A stretch of 64,000 nucleotides of DNA, taken from contig JAAPAO010000113.1 of the NCBI GenBank assembly GCA_013115145.1, positions 1-64,000 on the forward strand, in the 5' to 3' direction. The DNA comes from Perkinsus chesapeaki ATCC PRA-425. Taxonomy: Eukaryota; Protista; Perkinsozoa. Made by a program: the position numbers and the translations under genes. Of the stretch, positions 1 to 59,831 are shown one piece after another; the stretch's first letter is position 1; every line of letters starts with the position of its first letter. The notes beneath the pieces are model-generated. The model was given only the letters and a program-made list of their open reading frames with translations. It was not told where the DNA came from and did no database searches.

Positions 1-3000
1 CACACACCCAAACTCCTTTTTATAAGGCTTATTAATATATTCTTGTGGTTGGTTGCACCGAGACCGTCCACACCGCCGTGAGCTTGGCGATAATGGTTTC
101 CCAGCTGTCAGATTTGACGAACATTTCAGAGTTGCCCAGGACGTAGAGCCCCTCCTTAGCACGGGACATGGCCACAATAACACGGTTTTCTATACCAGTG
201 AAACCGATCTTGCGCGCTTTGTTCGACCGCACCAACGATAAGATAACGACCTTATTTTCTTCGCCTTGGTAGTCATCGATCGTAACCACGCGCGCACCCG
301 ACTTCGTGCCGTCCGGGCTTCTTCGGAGCTCCTTGTCCAGCATGTTTCGGATGAGTCTCTTCTGACCGATGTATGGCGTCAACAGAGTTATCTCCTCAGC
401 ACTGTACTGCTGTGTGCGCACCAAATAAAGCGCCAAACCCGCCGCAAATCTGGCCTCAAAATCGTTCCTCTTCGATGTGCCCTCGTAGGCTTGCTCTGGC
501 TCTCTGTGATCGACAAAATAAACATCGGCAGCAACCCCCCCGACTCGGTCGTAGTTCTTAACTCTGTCATGATCCAGCAAGCCATTCACATAAAAATGCT
601 TCACCAACGCGCTCACCTCCGGTCGCATTCTCAACTGAGTCGTCAGTCTAGTGAAGGGCACATCGACGTTGATTAAGCGCTCGAACAAGGATATGTCGAA
701 ATGGTTCTTCTTGGTCAGCTCGTACGCATTCACCTTGGGCCTCAGTTGCTGGTGGTCACCGATCATAACCAAATGTTGAAGGTTCGGTGATGACAAACTG
801 GCCACCAGCTGACACTCCAGCAGTTCTCCAGCTTCTTCAATGACAACAACTCTCGGGGCCAGACGATGCAGGAGGTCTCTGTTAAGAGCAGCATACGTAC
901 TGGTCATCCCGACGAGCTTAGCCCCGCGGCACGCTCGTAACGACAAAGCCTTCCTTTGTTGAGCGTGGGACTTCGCGAGTTCTCTTCCATCTTTATATAT
1001 CTGATGGAGCCTCGCCTTCATCGGTCCCTCTAGTGCTCCACCAACGGCCTCAAGGACGCCCCGTTTGTTCCTTCTAGAGCTCCTTCTGATCACCATCATC
1101 CCAGCGTCATGAACAGCATTGTGGCACGCCGCCGCAACAACGCGCGCGTTCAGCGACTCCTCTAATTTCGCGCGTATTTTCCTCTGCAACGCTGCTGCCA
1201 TCGAAAAGTCACTTTTCCATTCTTTGTTGATTCTCAAACCATCACAGTTGTCGCCATGTGGCCTATCGACTGGCCCCTCATCAGCAGCAGCCCGAGTAGG
1301 ATCCTGCACAACTTGCTCATCTTGCACTTCCTCAACGCCGCCACCACCAGCCGCCCAGTCATCCAGCTGCCTGTCGCCCTCAATTTGCTGTATTCGGTCC
1401 ATATCAATCTCACCCTCCTCCTCCCCATCTTCTATTTCCGGCTCGGGAATGGCGAATTCAAAAAGTCTCTTCACTTCGCGCTCCGCTCCGCCGACCATCA
1501 TCTCGTGCATTCCGCGCCGCGCATTTTCTGGCAGGGACCCGAAAGTCTTCTGTCGACTTGGCCTGTAGCCACCGCCGAAGTCAAAACGGTTTGACGTTCT
1601 CACTCGTCGGCCGCCACCGCCCTCCATTTGAACTCCCCAACGCTTCAGCAAATCCTTCTCGTTGTGGACCAACTCAACTTCCTCTTCCTCGAGCCAGGCA
1701 CGCAGCGCCATTACGGCGAACTCTGCCGCGTGGAAGCCCAACTTGGCGAAACTGGTGCGCCATCCTGGCGGCCTCAGGACTTTACGAAACAGACTGAACG
1801 GCAGGTAAGCCAACGCGCAGAGCAGCTGCGCGTCACCACCCTGGTAGAGAGCCACCACAGAATTCAAGGTGCGCTTGATGCCCATCAACTGATCACGGCA
1901 CTTCCTCCTTTTTTTATATTCCAAATGAGTCTCCTTCGATTTGAACCTCGGATGACATCTCTGAAGCTCCTCGTTGTCAGTCTGAGATCTTCCCCCAAAT
2001 CTCACTATACCGTTTATCATGAAGGGCAGCAAGTCCTCGAGCAACTGGTCCAGTGCATGGTTCGTTAGCGTGACCGCGAGTATAGGCTCATCGTAATGCT
2101 TGAAATCCAACACAGCACGGGCGATGCGAGAGAACTTGACACCGAGGTAACTTTTCCCGGTCCCCGGCGGACCTGAGAAGAGATAAAGATAACGAGGTGT
2201 AGTGAGACTCATCAGGCATCTATGATCTTAGCTATGCCCAAGACTTAGGCATATTCAACAATTTCAGGATTCACTTGAGAGTTCTCTACTGGGAAGTCAT
2301 TGGCTATGAAAAGTTGATAATGCTCCGGAAAAAGGGAACATTCCCGTAGAAATTGTTTAACAAATCTGCAGTAATACCGAGTAACGTTTTAACGGAAAAC
2401 TTCGCCGACTAGTGAACCACAAATGAGACCCGATCTCCGAAAAATCCGAGCATGTTTCGCGGAAAACAACATTGGAAATAACAATATTGCCACCTTGCAC
2501 GATCGCCACTGGTGTCTTCAATATGTACTTCATGGCTTCCTCTTGAGCAGCATCCAACTCGATAGGCTTCCCCGTCAACTTCGGCCATACAGCCAACGGG
2601 TCACTGACAACCGTTCCCTCACCAGCACCAACATAGAGTGGAGATAGATCAACCTTGGCAGCACGCATGTACGGCGGAGGGTCGACACTAGGCTCAACTG
2701 TGCCGAGAACAGCAGGCAATAGGGGCATGCCAGCTAGGAGATCCCCGTCTCGGAGGAAGTCGAAAACGGGCCGCTTTGCCATGAAGTAGTCGGGGCTTTC
2801 GAGCATGCAGTATTCAGATCGGAAATCAAAGCGGCGGAAGTTGTCGTCATCAAAGGCCAAGCCGACCGTGCCGCTGTTCGACTTCGTGCCGCCGGTCCTC
2901 TTTAGGTCGAAGTTCTCAACAGTTGCATAGACCAGGGATTCGGAATCCGCACGACCTTGAGGGGTGCCAGTGGTGGTCTTGAACAGAGCGACAAGAGAGC

Positions 3001-4021
3001 CGTAGATAAGATGACTTCCGAGAGTGAAGTCAACCGGTCTCGGGCAGACAAAACGAACCAGCACGAACGCCTCTGCTGTGCCCGAGACACCGAACGGCTG
3101 CTGCAGTGCTTTCACGTGGCTGTAACACATCGCTCGAGGGGGGATGCCCGAGTCGGTGGCCAAGCCGAGAGAGTGGACCAGAGCCTCTTTCAATGGTAAT
3201 AAGAATTCTTGGCGCAAACAGAAATAGTGGGTCGCTCTGTAAAGCAGGACCTCAGCTGGACTCGAGGCTTCCCACTTGTCAGCCTCGCGGTTCACCAGCT
3301 TCGACAAGGCCTTAGGTGGAACGCCTTCGTCTGTGATTTCCTCCAAGGACGGCATCAGGTGTTTCTCGTTCATAAGATTCTCATATTGCTCTTCTTCATC
3401 ACCAGCAAACTCCGTGACGCGACGCCGGTCTCGACTCGGACGAAAATTTTTTAGCGGCCCGCCGGATTTGTTGAATTCTATTTGCCTGAGGGTAACTTGA
3501 GTCATCTCTTCTCGTCAAGAGAGAGCCTCAGCCCTCTTGGCCAGCATCTCCACGGGCACCAACGTGGCCGCAGCCTGGTCAACTCTGCCGACTTCTACCA
3601 GAACACGCATGCAGCTGACCAGCGCCGCTTGGGATTGCACTTGGTTAACAAATGAAAGTGTCGACATAATTATATTAGCACTTAAGCATCTCAGTAGCTC
3701 GTCGAGTTTAGAATGGTCGAATGCAACAGGGCAGGTCACCAAAACTTCGAAAAGGACGCGGAGCTCCGCTACGGCCAGATCGCGCATGAAAAGATTGATC
3801 TTGTCTCGGAGAAGATGGACTCTATCAAGCACGAAGTCGGCGTTCTTATGGCGGCTAATGCTCCTGAGGAATCGCCCGGCTTCAGCAACACTTTCGATCT
3901 TATCACGATCAACCGGCTTCTCGCCTTCCTTCAACTTCACATGGGAGTAGCGGCAGGCATCGCCGTTACGACAATTGCCTCTGGCGAAGAAGTGGCAGGA
4001 GGGGGCCATGGGGAACCACAA
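1..4021 (-). CDS. ZNFX1/Hrr1-like Upf1-family (SF1) RNA helicase with N-terminal CCCH zinc finger; multi-exon, probably runs off the window at the left; in-frame TGA at 3515-3517
   Basis: N-terminus CHFFARGNCRNGDACRYSH (C-x7-C-x5-C-x3-H). Walker A VQG|PPGTGKS is rebuilt by a GT-AG intron 2493..2173. Further motifs: VTLTNHALDQLLE, GMTST, VIEEAGE (the EEA Walker B typical of ZNFX1), IGDHQQLRP, SLFERL, QLRMRP, LTPYIGQ, IDDYQGEE, NRVIVAMSRAK. Confidence 0.85.
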
Positions 4022-32158: not shown

Positions 32159-32283
32159 GTGCTAGAAACTGTTCCCCTACGGCCAAGAATATGGCTTTAG
32201 TTCTCCCAAAAGTTCTGAGTGCTAGAAACTGTTCCCCTACGGCCAAGAATATGGCTTTAGTTCTCCCAAAAGTTCTGAGTGCT
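32159..32283. repeat. Exact 60-bp tandem duplication
   Basis: Lines 32161-32220 and 32221-32280 are identical. Confidence 0.95.
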
Positions 32284-36314: not shown

Positions 36315-37599
36315 TCATACTATCACATTGTCGAAGCCCAATCCCCAGTTGGTGTCCCCTTCCTGAACCAGCCTGACCGCAACCCTCTTGCCGAATCCAT
36401 CGGCGGTCTCCTCCCCTAGGTACAGAACAGGCGGATTGCCTCCACAGACTTTGATATTATCGAGCCTTAATGGATTTATTTTAATAATACTCTCCGCCGT
36501 CGCCAGAGTGGCTTTGATGTCTTCTTGATGATGATGATAACCAACAAAGAAAATGCAGTTTTCTGCCGGATTCTTGATAGCAAAGACATTTTCGAGCTTA
36601 ACAAAGGACATGTCGGAAAGAGACTCAAACAGGATATTGAACATTGGATATCGAGTTATCAACTCTACTGTGAGTGTCACTCTCCCATTGCCCATAGCGT
36701 TACCAGTAGTAAGTACGATATTCTTCGGATGCCTGGAAGTGGCGGGGCCTTGGCCAACCAAATGAGGAGGAGTGTCTACTTTCATAGGGCCTTGGCCAAA
36801 CAAATGAGGAGGAGTGTCTACTTTCATAGGGCCTTGGCCAAACAAATGAGGAGGAGTGTCTACTTTCATAGGGCCTTGGCCAACCAAATGAGGAGGAGTG
36901 TANNNNNNNNNNNNNNNNNNNNNNNNNNNNNNNNNNNNNNNNNNNNNNNNNNNNNNNNNNNNNNNNNNNNNNNNNNNNNNNNNNNNNNNNNNNNNNNNNG
37001 TCTACTTTCATAGGGCCTTGGCCAACCAAATGAGGAGGAGTCTCTACTTTCATAGGGCCTTGGCCAACCAAATGAGGAGGAGTCTCTACTTTCATAGGGC
37101 CTTGGCCAACCAAATTAAAAGAAGGAGCATATACCCCTGGAGTGGGAGAGGGGTCGAGGGGAACCGCACAATCTAATCTTGTGAAGACACCGGCCTTTGT
37201 TTTCTCCACCCTGTAGTAGAGCACAACCTTGCTTTCTTTATAACATATGACAACCTTATTCTTTCTTCCAGTTGTTTTGCTCGCTTGTGGTTCCCCGGTA
37301 AGATAATAGCAACGACCGAAATTATTAAACTTGGATAACGTAAGCGAGGAAATCTCCTTCAAAATGCCGAGTTGCAACGCATTGTATGTGCCGTGGATGT
37401 CATAGAAGGCAACCAGGGAATGGGAATTACCAGGTCCTGCGGACAACCTTACTCTGGACATTTCAGGCCAGCAAGTCCTAGTGTTATCGTTTGCATATCC
37501 TTCGTAGGTACCCAGTGGAAGGTCTCCTTCCTTCAAGGAGATGCTGCCAACAGCTCCATAAAGCGAGAGGCTCGCCAATAAGATACTTCGTGTGAACAT
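36315..37599 (-). CDS. Secreted two-domain protein with central 14-aa repeat (GQGPMKV[DE]TPPHL[VF]); single gene split by an N gap
   Basis: MFTRSILLASLSLYGAVGS is signal-like. The same 42-bp repeat lies on both sides of the gap, joining ORF 36700..37599 (N half) to ORF 36315..36887 (C half). Confidence 0.75.
36745..37112. repeat. Coding minisatellite, 42-bp unit (gtctactttcatagggccttggccaaccaaatgaggaggagt)
   Basis: About 6 visible copies flanking the N gap 36903..36999. Confidence 0.95.
36903..36999. other. Assembly gap (N run)
   Basis: Run of n characters. Confidence 1.
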
Positions 37600-38998: not shown

Positions 38999-41900
38999 AT
39001 GAATGCCGAACTCATATTTCCACTAATACTATTTTCAACCCTATCCATTTACGTATGTTATAATTTATACACATATGCTCGACACCAGACCCCCAAAAGT
39101 TCGTTCATTCTCTCATGTTGCGGTATGATACTATCGGTCCTCACATTGACCCTTGTGCCATATGACCTCAGCCGGACTGCCTCCCCCAACTCCAATGGCC
39201 TGGCAATATCGTGGCGAGTGACTTATTGGCTCTCCTTTGCTCTATCGTGGGTGGCATTTCCCACTATGACTCAATACGAAAAAGTTCACTCCATTAAACG
39301 GGCATTTCGTCGTAATATATACTGGCATATCTTGTACGCCATTATCGGTATTGTAGCTCTATTGTATCTTTGGTTCCATGGTGACCTCGGTCTCTCTGGT
39401 ATAGTTGGATTCATCTATGCTGCCTCGAATGCCTGGGGTTTGGTATTGGTAACATTTTTGATGGGTTATGGGTTGGTAGCTATTCCGCAATGGTTAGCAG
39501 TTCTTGCTAAGGACGAACGCTTAATACAAGCATTATATGCTCAAGCGGTACAAGGAAATGATGTAATAATGGAACGGAGATTTGGGGAAAATACGGTATG
39601 AAATTGGATTAGAAACCTTAATAGTGAGCTTAGTGCCTCACGTATTAATTATTTTTCGAAGCATCAATAATTTTCCTTGGAGATCCAAAGTTGAAGACAA
39701 AAAGATGATTTTCTTCATCTATTCAAGGTTGCCCTGCTGCGGGCCAAACCTGATTTGAGTTCTTCACTACTAGATGATATTCTCGCGATTTATAAGGAAT
39801 CTGCAGATGGTTATCGCCTTATGTGTGTTTGCTTAACAGGCCCGATTGAAGAGCAAATACGAGCTCACGGATACTTTTAATGCCTGCAAGAACATACCGT
39901 TATCGTCCATGGACGTGTCAGCAAGGGAAAAGGTGATACCTCGGGAAGTTGAGGGAAAGCCGGTATGAAATTCCCTGTAGACTAGTTCGTTGCTTGGAGG
40001 CTTTAGACATCGATGCTTCGAAAATGGTACAGGAATTTATCATCTGAAAAATCACTGTTGAGTGTTTGGAGTGCGCCTAGTCGAAAGCTATTGGTAGAGT
40101 AGTAGTACTGTGACTATCATCAGATGCGTGAAAGCGCGGAGTTCTTGGGAGTGTATTGGAATAGCCGTCGTAGTGACGATGATTCGTTCCACAGCATATC
40201 CAATGGAGACGAGGATCCTGTTGAAAAGGAAGAATCTGGTAATAGAGGAATGGGGGCTTTAAGATACTTCTAGGCGTGGGCCTTATAGGATTCATCGCTC
40301 ATGGTATAATGAGCGCATTTTGATTGATACGTATGAGACTGGTAAAGTGTTCACATTGTGATATGCCTGTGTTTTGCCTGGCTGAAGCTCAGAGCAGCTT
40401 TTGGAATTCATTGTTGAGTTACACTGTGTAGAGTCTACAGCTCAACAACAATCAGTTCCAAAAGCTGCTCTGATATACTGCTAGTTTGATATAATATATA
40501 GTATTAATGACGTATTATTCTTCGACACATACCATACTGACCTATAGAGGGATATACAATCTGGTATTAGAAGTGAGGCCTTCTACTGGAGGATACAGCG
40601 TTATCGTATATAATAATAGTAGATAATTATAGTAGTATTGAATCAATACGATCAATGACTTATTACTATCAGTAGTAATAAATCACTAATTATAAGAAAG
40701 TAGTTATAAGTCTTATATAAGTTATAAGAACTTATTATACCAAGTTTTATATAATCCCACCGCTTTCTAGTTTGGAGATCTCATCGCCTTGTAGGGTCTC
40801 CCCAAGGGGAAGCGTTAATTCCTGATAATAGTAGCCAACTATCGAGAGAATCAATAGAAGTATCGATGACCAAGTTGGAGGAGTCATTGGCTGAAGCACG
40901 GAGGGAAAATCATAGGTAGAGTGACAGGTGGGAAAGTTTATGAAGAGTACTTTGGAGGAAACTTAATAAAATTGGTTCTCAGTGGATTTCATTTGAAGTG
41001 GGAGTTTCCGATATCCCACAATGATACATGTTTTCAAAAAGGATTTTGAAATGTAATAGATTTCCCACTTTCCCACTTCTGCGTTGTTTGGAGAGGAGGC
41101 GACATTATTTCCCAATTCGGAAGGTTATTCGTATAATCATTATTTAAAGTGCTAAATTGTAGCCATAATGGGTACATTCAAGGAACACTACTCAATGGGA
41201 GGCTTGTACGTAATGGGAGACATTTGTCGGAAATCCAGTACGTTTCGAGGTTGTAGAAGTAAGTTCAACTTTGGAGCATCTTTTTGCATGCCCTTCTACT
41301 TCATTTTTCCTCATAACAGCTGACTTACACTTAGATGGTCGGATTTGGTCGATAAAGCTGTGAAGGTTGAAGATAGGATGTCTCGGCGAAGTGAAATGCC
41401 GGATAGGCAGGGTAGATGGGAAACCGTGAAGAGATATTTGGTACTAGGAGTCTCGGGAAGGCCCGGCTTGTTGCATATTATAGCTCGAGCAAGATCACTA
41501 GCTTCTCCGTGAATAGTCCTTATTGGCAACTTACCGGTGTATGATTGATGTCTGTAATCCTGTTGCTATATAATCTCTGTCTGTATCCAGAGTTGGTACT
41601 ATTTCTGTACAGTTTTCTAACCTCAACCATATGATGCTTGTTCTAAATGCGTATAGAAAGTAGTGAATATCACTACGCTCACGGAGCTTGTTTCACCATG
41701 CACGGCATGACCTAGCTGTGCAGAATACAGAAAGCAATTATTCCAGTCATTATCGACTTATTGTTAAGAATGTTGAGGTGCTCTTCATCGTTATCGTTTA
41801 GTGATGATATAATGTGTAGTACCAGTTTTATAGTGGAGAGAGCCGTGTAGCCTCCTGCCTGTATGTTAAATGTTTACAGTAACTATTGATAGTGGAAATG

Positions 41901-56998: not shown

Positions 56999-57997
56999 AT
57001 GAATATTCTGGGCTACTCGTTAAGCGAAGTTGCGATTATCTTCGCTAATTTCACATGCAATGTTGCATTGGTAAACTCAGTGAAGTATATCCAATATACA
57101 TTACATTATCCATATCCACTTCTAATAAGTGCAATGCATATGATATTTTCATGGCTAGCATGTGGTATATATGTTAAATTTAATGTACCTGCATTAAGAG
57201 AATATACATTTGTACGTTATATGAAAGAAGTATTTCCAGTAGCTGGTATGGCTAGTTTAAGTATTGGTTGCGGTAATATGGCACTTAAATATATATTCCC
57301 ATCATTTCATGAATTATTACAACAAACAAGTCCAGCAGCACAAGTATTGGTATGCGTACTTATTTATCATCAAAAATATAATCTACCAACATATCTATCA
57401 ATGATACCTATCTGTGGTGGTGCTATTATGTGTTCTGGTGGCGAGGTTAACTTTAATGCCATTGGTGTATTCTTCTCTATCTCCACTGTCATTACCAGAG
57501 CCCTCAAGAACACTATGCAATCTCGATTAATGACTACCTCATTTACCAGCATCGAACTACTTTACGTGCTTGCTCCTGCAAACCTGTTCTTCTTCCTCAC
57601 CGGCTCATTTATCTTTGAGGGCGTCTTTGAGCCTGTCAGACAGCTCATCTCCACACCACACGCTCTGGTGGCAGTGCTAATATCTGCGCTCCTTGCGTGC
57701 ACTTACAATCTGTTGGCCTTCAAGATGTTGCAAGTTCTGTCACCAGTAGGCGCTATGGTTGTACACACCCTCAAGACGCCAGCAACTTTGGTGGTCTCCA
57801 CTCTTTTATTTGGTAATAAAATCGGTTTCTTGCAGGTGGTCGGTTTTGTTATCATCACTGTTGGTGTTTATTACTACAAGAATTACGGTAAAGAGATCAA
57901 GCCCGATGATTACCAAAAAATCAACTACAAGACCGGAGGCGATCCTGACGAGTTCGACCTTGAAATGGCGGACCGTAGGGAGTCTCCTCGGAACTAA
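56999..57997 (+). CDS. Triose-phosphate/nucleotide-sugar transporter (TPT/SLC35E-like DMT), copy 1, intronless
   Basis: 332 aa, multipass. KY..YTLHYPYPLLISAMHM, GNMALKY, CSGGEVNFNAIG, YNLLAF..LQVLSP...VVHTLKT. Confidence 0.92.
   Translation: MNILGYSLSEVAIIFANFTCNVALVNSVKYIQYTLHYPYPLLISAMHMIFSWLACGIYVKFNVPALREYTFVRYMKEVFPVAGMASLSIGCGNMALKYIFPSFHELLQQTSPAAQVLVCVLIYHQKYNLPTYLSMIPICGGAIMCSGGEVNFNAIGVFFSISTVITRALKNTMQSRLMTTSFTSIELLYVLAPANLFFFLTGSFIFEGVFEPVRQLISTPHALVAVLISALLACTYNLLAFKMLQVLSPVGAMVVHTLKTPATLVVSTLLFGNKIGFLQVVGFVIITVGVYYYKNYGKEIKPDDYQKINYKTGGDPDEFDLEMADRRESPRN
57066..57481. repeat. 416-bp block 100% identical to 58867..59282
   Basis: Line-by-line comparison at offset 1801 shows no mismatch. 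The flanks are diverged. Confidence 0.95.
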
Positions 57998-58799
57998 AGC
58001 GCCACTGCAATCATCCGTTCTCGTTTGCTGCCGCTCTGTAAATAGTCTATTCTACCGTAATGCAACGTTGCCCTGCTGTAGCTCCGGCAACGAAGCATGT
58101 GATGGTTACGATTGTTGTCGCAAAGGTTGTTGCGCACACGTGCAAGTTTAGAATAAGATTTGTAGCTTATATCCTTTGGAAAGTATCGGTATGCTGTCGT
58201 TGTTGGTACCAATAATATTTCTCTACTATAATGATATGATTTTTGTTATCATCGGCATCAGTATCGGTGAAAGTCACCAGCGAGGGCGCAACAAGAGGCT
58301 AGCTTCGGTAGCGGGGTGCTTATTCGGGTACCGTTCATCGGAGGGGGACAGAGTTTGTGTCGGTTTTATCATGAAGAGGTGTGATGGGAAGTACGGATAG
58401 CACAAATGAGTTGGAGTGGTCCGAAAAATTGTTAAAAGAATGCAATTCTCGGCTCCTGAGCAAAGTGCGCAAACTGCTACTTGGTCGTTGCTCGAGCACC
58501 GTATTTAATTCCAGTGCAAAAAAGGAAATGACCTCTACTGCGTGTGGAGCGCTGTGGTTTTGTGGAGCATGTTCCGAGGCTCCGGTTGCGGCTAGACGGA
58601 TGGTGTTGAAGGTAGACCTCCGAGACTAGGGGCTCTGGGAGAACATTGAAAACGCACTAATTTTCAAAGCTTGACGTTGCGCGACAGGTGGTAGTGGATT
58701 TGTCCAAGTTAGGTGGATGAGCTTGTCGTGGGGCTAACTGATTATACTCGAAATGCATGCGACGTTCGATGGTGTGTTGTCAGTTTTAATATTATTATT

Positions 58800-59831
58800 A
58801 TGGTGGTCCTTGGTTACACTGTTGCCGAGCTTGGAATCATTCTAGCATGCTTCACATGTAACTTATCATTGGTAAACTCAGTGAAGTATATCCAATATAC
58901 ATTACATTATCCATATCCACTTCTAATAAGTGCAATGCATATGATATTTTCATGGCTAGCATGTGGTATATATGTTAAATTTAATGTACCTGCATTAAGA
59001 GAATATACATTTGTACGTTATATGAAAGAAGTATTTCCAGTAGCTGGTATGGCTAGTTTAAGTATTGGTTGCGGTAATATGGCACTTAAATATATATTCC
59101 CATCATTTCATGAATTATTACAACAAACAAGTCCAGCAGCACAAGTATTGGTATGCGTACTTATTTATCATCAAAAATATAATCTACCAACATATCTATC
59201 AATGATACCTATCTGTGGTGGTGCTATTATGTGTTCTGGTGGCGAGGTTAACTTTAATGCCATTGGTGTATTCTTCTCTATCGGTGCGGTTATTACACGC
59301 GCTTTGAAGAACACTATGCAAGCCCACCTTATGACGGTATCTTTCTCCACCATAGAGCTCCTCTTCGTCCTTGCTCCAGCAAATCTTTTCTTCTTCATGG
59401 CCGCCTCGATAATATCTGAGGGCCCAATCGAGCCGATAGGGAATCTCTTGAAGTCGCCCGGTGCATTTATCGCTGTTATCGCCTCGTCAGTGCTGGCCTG
59501 TTCGTATAACTTATTGGCATTCAAAATGCTGCAGGTCTTATCGCCTGTCGGGGCGATGGTTGTTCACACGTTAAAGACACCGGCAATGCTGCTCATATCC
59601 TTCATGCTATTTGGTAACCAAATTGGTATTATGCAAATTATAGGGTTTATTGTTATTACTGTTGGCGTTCATTATTATAAGAAGTATGGGAAGGAAATTA
59701 AAGATGATGATTATGTTGTCGTCGGCAGCAGCAGTCCGAAGGGCAAGAGGGAGCTCGATGAGTTCGACCTGGAAGGCAATCACGATGCGGAAGTTAAATC
59801 TGTTTCCAGCGACCTAGACGACAGTATCTGA
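58800..59831 (+). CDS. Triose-phosphate/nucleotide-sugar transporter, copy 2, intronless
   Basis: 343 aa with the same motifs as copy 1 and an acidic DEFDLE cytosolic tail. Confidence 0.92.
   Translation: MVVLGYTVAELGIILACFTCNLSLVNSVKYIQYTLHYPYPLLISAMHMIFSWLACGIYVKFNVPALREYTFVRYMKEVFPVAGMASLSIGCGNMALKYIFPSFHELLQQTSPAAQVLVCVLIYHQKYNLPTYLSMIPICGGAIMCSGGEVNFNAIGVFFSIGAVITRALKNTMQAHLMTVSFSTIELLFVLAPANLFFFMAASIISEGPIEPIGNLLKSPGAFIAVIASSVLACSYNLLAFKMLQVLSPVGAMVVHTLKTPAMLLISFMLFGNQIGIMQIIGFIVITVGVHYYKKYGKEIKDDDYVVVGSSSPKGKRELDEFDLEGNHDAEVKSVSSDLDDSI

What the first reader, a model, noticed from the sequence alone, without database searches (positions are those of the whole stretch)
57066..59282. 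Identical 416-bp block in two transporter paralogs is A/T-saturated at synonymous sites: RIP-like, homology-dependent mutation?
Seen: 57066..57481 equals 58867..59282 exactly, while the flanks are strongly diverged. By hand count, only ~5 of 108 non-Met/Trp codons in the block core end in G/C (~5%), versus 32 of 58 (~55%) directly downstream in copy 1. GC3 recovers toward both block edges, and the protein stays intact. Known: gene conversion explains identity but is usually GC-biased; fungal RIP/MIP targets duplicated sequence of roughly this length or longer with C-to-T changes. Inference: a duplicate-sensing deamination or methylation process plus conversion and purifying selection may operate in this non-fungal lineage, consistent with the A/T-eroded TEs. 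Caveat: the short-unit coding minisatellites here are not A/T-eroded.
Basis: partly seen in the sequence, partly recalled or inferred. Interest (0 to 1): 0.85.

Follow-up and report, generated by a model that had tools for sequence, protein, structure and literature searches.

The report
AT-shifted gene-conversion tract in transporter paralogs
In the clam parasite Perkinsus chesapeaki, two neighbouring transporter genes and a third copy keep overwriting one another over the same ~0.4 kb, and in that stretch alone nearly every silent codon position has become A or T, the opposite of what gene conversion usually does to base composition.

Summary
Window 57066-57481 equals 58867-59282 exactly (416 bp). 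GC3 is 17/130 in the block and 5/108 in its core, against ~0.53 in the flanks (p~1e-13).

The window is Perkinsus chesapeaki. The genes are tandem TPT-family transporters A and B.

The block is a long-lived gene-conversion tract:
- A and B are also identical over the same codons in P. marinus and P. olseni, while the block differs between species.
- Trees group the block by species and the downstream half by paralog.
- A second P. chesapeaki sample has near-identical flanks (1 difference in ~2.8 kb), but both blocks are replaced by a version with 17 differences. That version belongs to a third copy, A3.

The AT shift is limited to the tract and varies by lineage: GC3 is 0.13 in P. chesapeaki, 0.36 in P. 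marinus and 0.54 in P. olseni. A3 is AT-rich only inside the block. The single-copy paralog C has normal GC3 (0.52).

A RIP-like mechanism is not supported. Transversions are as common as transitions at 4-fold sites, the RIP indices are negative, and the copies are identical and intact.

Best reading: recurrent non-allelic conversion with an A/T-favouring bias, plus purifying selection on the protein. The conversion is shown; the bias mechanism is inferred.

Other first-stage notes of this scan report AT-shifted homogenised tracts in at least 10 other families on other DNA of this genome. I did not test them.

The parts
56999..57997 (+). Gene A, a TPT-family (PF03151) sugar-phosphate/nucleotide-sugar-type transporter of 332 aa. 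It starts at MNILGY, as do its P. olseni and P. marinus orthologs.
   Evidence: ORF and Pfam hits. Orthologs P0002 and P0003. RNA contigs cover its 5' context and 3' half.
58800..59831 (+). Gene B, a tandem TPT-family paralog of 343 aa counted from MVVLGY.
   Evidence: ORF and Pfam hits. Ortholog P0001 in P. olseni and the second gene of the P. marinus locus.
57066..57481 (+). Homogenised (gene-conversion) tract, copy in gene A, codons 23-161. It encodes the first half of the transporter.
   Evidence: Exact identity to 58867-59282. It groups by species in the tree. It is replaced as a unit in a second strain.
58867..59282 (+). Homogenised (gene-conversion) tract, copy in gene B.
   Evidence: Exact identity to 57066-57481. 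In the source sample it is a single 416-bp unitig at 2.4x the flank depth.
57092..57439 (+). A/T-saturated core of the tract in gene A, codons 32-147, with GC3 5/108.
58893..59240 (+). A/T-saturated core of the tract in gene B, with the same sequence as in gene A.
57998..58799 (.). Spacer between A and B. GC is 0.47, composition is normal, and it is not homogenised.

Best explanation
The 416-bp block is a recurrent non-allelic gene-conversion tract. It is shared by two tandem TPT-family transporter genes, A and B, and by a third A-like copy, A3, which is either a paralog or a very divergent allele. A3 is seen in other samples of the species. Conversion has kept the first half of these genes identical within each Perkinsus species since before the species split, with a right boundary fixed at codons 160-161. 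The second half evolves separately as A-type and B-type. This part is shown.

In P. chesapeaki strongly, and in P. marinus partly, a bias coupled to this conversion favours A/T over G/C whatever the mutation type. The cause could be A/T-favouring correction of heteroduplex mismatches or A/T-biased repair synthesis. Each new A/T variant at a silent site then tends to spread to all copies, and G/C variants tend to be lost. Purifying selection blocks amino-acid changes. Silent sites therefore run to ~5% G/C in the most often converted core and less so at the edges. This part is inferred.
For: Conversion.
- A and B are 100% identical over codons ~31-150 in P. chesapeaki, P. olseni and P. marinus, while the block is only about 71-93% identical between species in 15-codon bins.
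- The block tree groups by species (100/100). The downstream tree groups by paralog (100/99), with A3 sister to A.
- Two P. olseni isolates differ at 16 block sites that A and B of each isolate share. One isolate has 6 A/B differences not yet homogenised.
- Sample X2 has 1 difference in ~2.8 kb of flank but 17 in the block. The block depth of 272.4 equals 75.1 + 76.3 + 120.7, the depths of three left contexts.
- 15 of those 17 differences are the A3 transcript's version.
- An RNA sample shows a mosaic block.

Link between AT shift and tract.
- GC3 is 0.13 in the block against ~0.52 in the flanks, p~1e-13. In P. marinus it is 0.36 against 0.50, p~0.01.
- A3 has GC3 0-0.17 inside the block and 0.33-0.87 outside it.
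- Single-copy paralog C has GC3 68/131 = 0.52 in the homologous segment.
- G/C-ending codons sit at the tract edges.
- Lineage-specific silent changes in the block run 20 G/C-to-A/T against 2 the other way. In the flanks the counts are 13:8 and 10:8.
- Two block versions 4% apart both sit at GC3 ~0.12, which points to a maintained state.

Bias by base class rather than by mutation type.
- At 50 4-fold sites the window has A30, T18, G1, C1.
- Sites that are C in P. olseni are A 9 times and T 7 times here.
Against: - P. olseni converts the same tract yet has normal GC3 of 0.54. Conversion alone is therefore not sufficient, and the bias must differ between species.
- No bias was measured directly.
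- The polarity of changes on the P. chesapeaki branch is uncertain, because the flank distances suggest, only weakly, that P. chesapeaki lies outside the other two species.
- Silent sites are near saturation, and counts are small.
- Silent divergence in the block is not higher than in the flanks, which argues against a strongly mutagenic repair version of this explanation.
- A/T-biased conversion has little precedent in nuclear genomes; converted regions are usually GC-enriched (PMC2720389).
- Only this one locus was tested here.
Confidence: 0.55

Rival explanations
1. A RIP/MIP-like system. A process that senses duplicated DNA deaminates or methylates cytosines in both copies, giving C-to-T and G-to-A changes. 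Conversion then re-homogenises the copies, and selection removes damaging changes.
For: The A/T shift is confined to a duplicated stretch of roughly RIP-competent length. Where P. olseni and P. marinus agree, 17 of the 20 G/C-to-A/T changes at all silent sites are transitions. T and A are gained about equally at third positions (57 and 56), so both strands are affected. Other first-stage notes report the same shift in other duplicated families (untested).
Against: Most of those transitions are forced by 2-fold codons. At 4-fold sites, C in P. olseni corresponds to A 9 times and T 7 times here. (CpA+TpG)/(ApC+GpT) is 1.36 and TpA/ApT is 0.90, neither RIP-like relative to local background. The copies are identical, with no nonsense or missense scatter. 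The same duplicate is untouched in P. olseni. No branch-length excess appears in the block.
Confidence: 0.08
2. An old A/T-rich tract that is merely carried along. The block became A/T-rich once, in an ancestor or from an A/T-rich donor. Conversion only copies it among A, B and A3, with no present bias.
For: Majority-rule reconstruction of the three-species node gives block GC3 near 0.3, below the flanks; this is my own tally of the pattern counts. P. marinus and P. chesapeaki share many A/T sites in the central part. A third copy does act as donor.
Against: A3 is not A/T-rich outside the block. Two block versions 4% apart (about 0.15 per silent site by my rough estimate) both hold GC3 ~0.12 instead of drifting toward the genomic ~0.5. 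At the 12 4-fold sites where P. olseni has G/C and both other species have A/T, the two agree only 7 times, near chance, which suggests parallel shifts rather than inheritance (small n). Third positions still carry orthologous signal, so a foreign origin is excluded.
Confidence: 0.15
3. Selection on the sequence itself. A/T-ending codons or an A/U-rich mRNA segment are favoured in the first half of these membrane proteins, for example for translation pacing, membrane insertion or low mRNA structure. Conversion spreads the favoured version.
For: The shift is strictly at silent sites and the protein is highly conserved. The codon choices are consistent within families: GTA, GGT, CCA, GCA.
Against: The P. 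olseni orthologs and the single-copy paralog C, with the same fold and segment, have normal GC3. The trough follows the conversion tract and its edges rather than a structural feature. A/T-ending codons are not rare in this genome, where GC3 is ~0.5.
Confidence: 0.12
4. Assembly artefact. The identity comes from collapse or mis-join of two diverged copies.
For: Short-read graphs collapse the block into one unitig.
Against: The unitig depth is about twice the flank depth in the source sample. In an independent sample it equals the sum of three contexts exactly. Transcripts carry the block with gene-specific flanks. Three other assemblies, of two other species, show the same identical tract.
Confidence: 0.01

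Closest known systems
Segmental concerted evolution of paralogs by non-allelic (interlocus) gene conversion, e.g. mammalian pairs converted for over 100 My (PMC2720389). From my own knowledge: Plasmodium falciparum Rh2a/Rh2b and human RHD/RHCE.
   Same: An identical tract with diverged flanks. In the tract, paralogs are closer than orthologs. Orthology is preserved outside it. The state persists across speciation, and the tract is mosaic and polymorphic between strains.
   Different: The converted tract is depleted of G/C at silent sites, not enriched. The degree differs sharply between sister species.
GC-biased gene conversion (gBGC)
   Same: The composition shift is limited to the recombining tract, acts by base class (G/C versus A/T) rather than mutation type, and is strongest where conversion is most frequent.
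   Different: The direction is opposite: A/T wins. It acts between paralogs, possibly in mitotic repair. No meiotic recombination data exist for this organism.
Repeat-induced point mutation (RIP) and MIP of ascomycete fungi
   Same: Duplicated DNA of a few hundred bp becomes A/T-rich.
   Different: Here transversions contribute, there is no CpA/TpG depletion, the copies stay identical and functional, and the same duplicate is unaffected in P. olseni. It works unlike RIP, and membership is not supported.
Recombination-associated mutagenesis (error-prone repair synthesis or damage to single-stranded DNA during double-strand-break repair; yeast literature, from my own knowledge)
   Same: It would tie extra mutations to the tract that is repeatedly resynthesised.
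   Different: No excess of silent substitutions is seen in the block relative to the flanks. A purely mutagenic version predicts a longer branch.

Membership tests
Concerted evolution by non-allelic gene conversion | Within the tract, paralogs of one genome are more alike than orthologs of different species. | tested here: met
   A and B are 100% identical in each of three species, against about 71-93% identity between species in 15-codon bins. The block tree groups by species at 100/100.
Concerted evolution by non-allelic gene conversion | Outside the tract, orthology is preserved (A with A, B with B) and copy number and arrangement are stable. | tested here: met
   The downstream tree has A and B clades at 100/99. 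The tandem A-B arrangement between the same neighbours occurs in P. olseni and P. marinus.
Concerted evolution by non-allelic gene conversion | Ongoing transfer: tract variants move between copies within a species. | tested here: met
   X2 has 1/2781 flank differences and 17/412 block differences, and both genes carry the A3 version. P. olseni isolates have 16 co-varying sites.
GC-biased gene conversion signature | GC3 of the converted tract is elevated over the flanks. | tested here: not met
   GC3 is 0.13 against ~0.52 in P. chesapeaki, 0.36 against 0.50 in P. marinus, and 0.54 against 0.54-0.65 in P. olseni.
RIP (repeat-induced point mutation) | Only C:G-to-T:A transitions. | tested here: not met
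   At 4-fold sites, C in P. olseni corresponds to A 9 times and T 7 times here. Where P. olseni and P. marinus agree at 4-fold sites, there are 3 C-to-A changes against 2 C-to-T.
RIP (repeat-induced point mutation) | Dinucleotide signature: TpA/ApT high, (CpA+TpG)/(ApC+GpT) low. | tested here: not met
   The values are 0.90 and 1.36 in the block, against 0.82 and 1.19 for the whole window.
RIP (repeat-induced point mutation) | Copies are mutated independently, which yields divergence and inactivating changes. | tested here: not met
   The copies are identical over 416 bp, the ORFs are intact and the amino-acid sequence is conserved.
RIP (repeat-induced point mutation) | A RID/Masc1-type cytosine methyltransferase is present and the process acts premeiotically. 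| not tested
   No query sequence was available from the tools. No sexual cycle is described for Perkinsus (my own knowledge).
TPT family of the drug/metabolite transporter superfamily (PF03151) | A Pfam TPT domain above the gathering score over most of the protein. | tested here: met
   A scores 110.2 bits and B 97.3 bits, against a cut-off of 30.

The most novel reading that the evidence does not exclude
Perkinsus chesapeaki, and to a lesser degree P. marinus but not P. olseni, has a genome-wide process linked to homology or recombination that drives every paralog-homogenised tract toward A/T. This would be A/T-biased non-allelic gene conversion, or a duplicate-targeted mutator unlike RIP. 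It would be the first clear nuclear case of conversion tracts being A/T-enriched, with a natural three-species contrast for finding the repair factor responsible.
Probability: 0.4. Interest if true: 0.8.

Novelty: new variant of a known kind. Interest (0 to 1): 0.62.

Why it matters
Converted regions are used almost as a diagnostic for GC enrichment (PMC2720389). GC-biased conversion is also a leading explanation for base-composition landscapes.

Here a tract is demonstrably converting now, and its silent sites are ~95% A/T in an otherwise ~50% GC3 genome. The same tract is normal in a sister species. This shows that the direction and strength of the composition bias attached to conversion can change between close relatives.

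If the other flagged families in this genome hold up, Perkinsus offers a tractable contrast for identifying which repair activity sets the bias. P. marinus can be transfected and CRISPR-edited (PMC8062965, listed).

There is also a practical point. The shift defeats gene prediction: both genes are annotated only from an internal Met, which omits the whole A/T-rich half.

Tried and rejected
- Assembly artefact: rejected.
- A/T-rich third donor gene: a third copy, A3, was found, but it is A/T-rich only inside the block, so this is rejected as the source of the composition.
- Low GC3 as a property of the protein segment: rejected. Paralog C has 0.52 and the P. olseni orthologs 0.54.
- RIP signature: tested by indices and by the 4-fold-site spectrum, and rejected.
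- Strand-specific (RNA-mediated or transcription-linked) deamination: third positions are T 57 and A 56, so there is no strand asymmetry.
- Embedded structured RNA: no Rfam hit at E<=0.1.
- Other long dispersed repeats in the window that could serve as a replicate: none.
- Block-only protein search: it returned only the two truncated gene models and a mis-modelled P. olseni gene.
- Scan of metagenome contigs for more transcripts: blank.
- The search of earlier findings by sequence: blank.
- Literature searches for gene conversion in Perkinsus, A/T-biased conversion in nuclear paralogs and non-fungal RIP: no precedent found.
- Independent replicate in another P. chesapeaki family: not possible. 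No window gene belongs to the families flagged by other readers, and the tools gave no route to those contigs.
- Amino-acid-level A/T pressure specific to the block: not seen. GC at positions 1 and 2 is 0.395 against 0.406-0.409 in the orthologs, a gap no larger than in the flanks.
Full report
**1. Observation**

Window 57066-57481 and 58867-59282 are identical over exactly 416 bp, and the identity breaks at the next base on each side. At the same 1801-bp offset, upstream sequence is essentially unrelated. Downstream sequence is 60-75% identical.

Both copies lie at base 68 of two + strand ORFs. Both ORFs match the Triose-phosphate Transporter family PF03151, at 110 and 97 bits against a cut-off of 30. 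Comparison with orthologs places the starts at 56999 for gene A (332 aa) and 58800 for gene B (343 aa).

GC3 excluding Met and Trp is 17/130 in the block, against 90/166 and 91/174 downstream. Fisher p is about 1e-13. G/C-ending codons number 5/9, 5/108 and 7/14 in codons 23-31, 32-147 and 148-161.

GC at codon positions 1 and 2 is unchanged. The block is the lowest-GC3 stretch among all long stop-free frames of the window. It is also the window's only long dispersed repeat.

**2. Organism and orthologs**

The closest proteins are from Perkinsus olseni (82% and 75% identity) and P. marinus (75%). The window's own truncated gene model maps to P. chesapeaki assembly GCA_013115145.1, contig JAAPAO010000113.1, at the same coordinates as the window.

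The tandem A-B pair sits between the same neighbours, an alpha/beta-hydrolase gene and a 2OG-oxygenase/GTPase gene, in P. olseni. In P. marinus the hydrolase gene is likewise upstream, but the gene called downstream has no Pfam hit on record.

**3. The block is a long-lived, still active conversion tract**

In a codon alignment, A and B are 100% identical at the DNA level over codons ~31-150 in each of the three species. The block itself is only about 71-93% identical between species in 15-codon bins. The longest identical runs are codons 24-161 in P. chesapeaki, 33-160 in P. olseni and 18-161 in P. marinus. The right boundary is therefore conserved to within a codon.

Maximum-likelihood trees make the point formally. 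The block groups by species (100/100). The downstream half groups by paralog type (100/99 for each clade).

Two P. olseni isolates differ at 16 block sites, and at each site A and B of one isolate share the same base. One isolate still has 6 A/B differences.

Reads give direct evidence of recent transfer in P. chesapeaki:
- In the source sample the block is one 416-bp unitig at depth 289.5, against flanks at 109-126.
- In an independent 2022 sample (X2) the flanks show 1 difference in ~2.8 kb, but the block unitig has 17 differences.
- The X2 block depth of 272.4 equals the sum of three left contexts: 75.1 for A, 76.3 for B and 120.7 for a third context that departs from A just upstream of the start codon.

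**4. The third copy, A3**

Cluster members of the truncated A model led to a transcript contig, L008, encoding protein P0013. Its 5' differences match the third context of X2. Its block carries 15 of X2's 17 differences.

Outside the block, A3 is A-like: 77-93% nucleotide identity to A, and sister to A at 100/100. So in X2 both A and B now carry the A3 version of the tract. An RNA sample has both versions in the first part of the block and only the A3-like version in the second part, which is a mosaic.

Whether A3 is a separate locus or a very divergent allele, and whether the source strain has it, stays open. The block depth there is 2.4x, no A3 flanks were laid, and no gene model for it is on record.

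**5. The A/T shift belongs to the tract, not to the protein or to a donor**

- A3 has GC3 of 0-0.17 inside the block and 0.33-0.87 outside it.
- The single-copy paralog C of the same genome (L005) has GC3 of 68/131 = 0.52 in the homologous segment.
- Across species the converting tract has GC3 of 0.13 in P. chesapeaki, 0.36 in P. marinus (0.07-0.14 in codons 61-90; p~0.01 against the flanks) and 0.54 in P. olseni (not different from the flanks).
- Silent changes unique to P. chesapeaki run 20 G/C-to-A/T against 2 the other way in the block. In the flanks the counts are 13:8 and 10:8.
- Changes unique to P. olseni in the block run 20:0 the opposite way, which may equally reflect parallel shifts in the other two species.
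- At the 12 4-fold sites where P. olseni has G/C and both others have A/T, the two agree only 7 times. This is near chance and hints at parallel shifts, but n is small.
- The two P. chesapeaki block versions differ at 15 silent and 2 replacement sites (A65S, V72I), yet both have GC3 ~0.12. The state is therefore maintained rather than decaying.

**6. Which mechanism**

A deamination or RIP-like process predicts only C-to-T and G-to-A changes, a dinucleotide signature, and independently damaged copies. None of these is seen:
- At 50 4-fold sites the block has A30, T18, G1, C1. Sites that are C in P. olseni are A 9 times and T 7 times.
- TpA/ApT is 0.90 and (CpA+TpG)/(ApC+GpT) is 1.36, like the local background.
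- The copies are identical and intact.
- The same duplicate is unaffected in P. olseni.

Third positions gain T and A equally (57 and 56), so there is no strand asymmetry. Silent divergence in the block is not above that of the flanks, so a strongly mutagenic process is not indicated either.

What remains is a preference by base class, A/T over G/C. It is confined to the converted tract and strongest in its most often converted core. This is the form expected of biased gene conversion, with the sign reversed. An alternative is repair synthesis with an A/T-biased error spectrum.

Selection on codons or mRNA is less likely, because the orthologs and paralog C lack the shift and the trough follows the tract edges. 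I commit to conversion with an A/T-favouring bias plus purifying selection. The conversion is shown. The bias is inferred, and its molecular cause is unknown.

**7. Comparison with what is known**

Segmental concerted evolution is well known. The literature I could search describes converted regions as GC-enriched (PMC2720389). My searches found no report of gene conversion in Perkinsus, of A/T-enriched nuclear conversion tracts between paralogs, or of RIP-like processes outside fungi.

The finding is therefore a new variant of a known kind.

Other first-stage notes of this scan, on other DNA of the same genome, report A/T-shifted homogenised tracts in at least ten other families. These include an aminopeptidase array, tandem IDH genes, a DCAF8-like pair, ACSL paralogs, SLC37-like and MFS transporters and SDR paralogs. 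I could not reach those sequences, so they remain leads only. If they hold, the phenomenon is genome-wide.

**8. Limits**

- Only the one read-laying run returned assembler contigs, not reads.
- Polarity on the P. chesapeaki branch is uncertain because the flank distances suggest, only weakly, that it lies outside the other two species.
- Silent sites are close to saturation.
- Several counts are small.

Noticed in passing
window 57401-57997 and 59202-59831: The public annotation models both transporter genes only from an internal Met (MIPICGG...), as proteins of 198 and 209 aa. The whole A/T-rich N-terminal half is left out, probably because the gene predictor rejects the atypical codon usage.
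   Followed up: partly
L008:149-1132 (transcript contig, JGI sample 3300016757); left context seen in X2 and X6 upstream of window 56995: A third A-like copy, A3 (protein P0013), is absent from the annotated proteins of the source assembly. It is present in an independent DNA sample at 1.6x single-locus depth and in RNA. Whether it is a paralog or a very divergent allele is unresolved.
   Followed up: partly
L004:2554-3550 and L004:6001-7037: In one P. olseni isolate assembly, both the A and B orthologs carry 1-2 nt length differences that shift the reading frame near or after mid-gene. These are either assembly indel errors or real disruptions.
   Followed up: no
window 57449-58161 (run X8): An RNA data set labelled as a different organism (organism B) holds a 713-nt contig identical to gene A's 3' half. 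It also holds a block contig whose loose end is the reverse complement of the A3 leader. This suggests mislabelling, cross-contamination or a chimeric contig.
   Followed up: no
window 19771-20337, 36690-37166, 32159-32278: Tandem repeats lie inside long open frames. There are about 18 overlapping registers of a 21-nt unit and seven of a 42-nt unit. There is also a perfect 60-nt tandem duplication. None is A/T-shifted like the block.
   Followed up: no
window 32-3505 (- strand): A large Upf1-like/ZNFX1-type helicase gene (AAA_11, AAA_12 and ZNFX1 domains) lies at the start of the window. An LMBR1-like membrane protein exon lies at 38999-39601.
   Followed up: no
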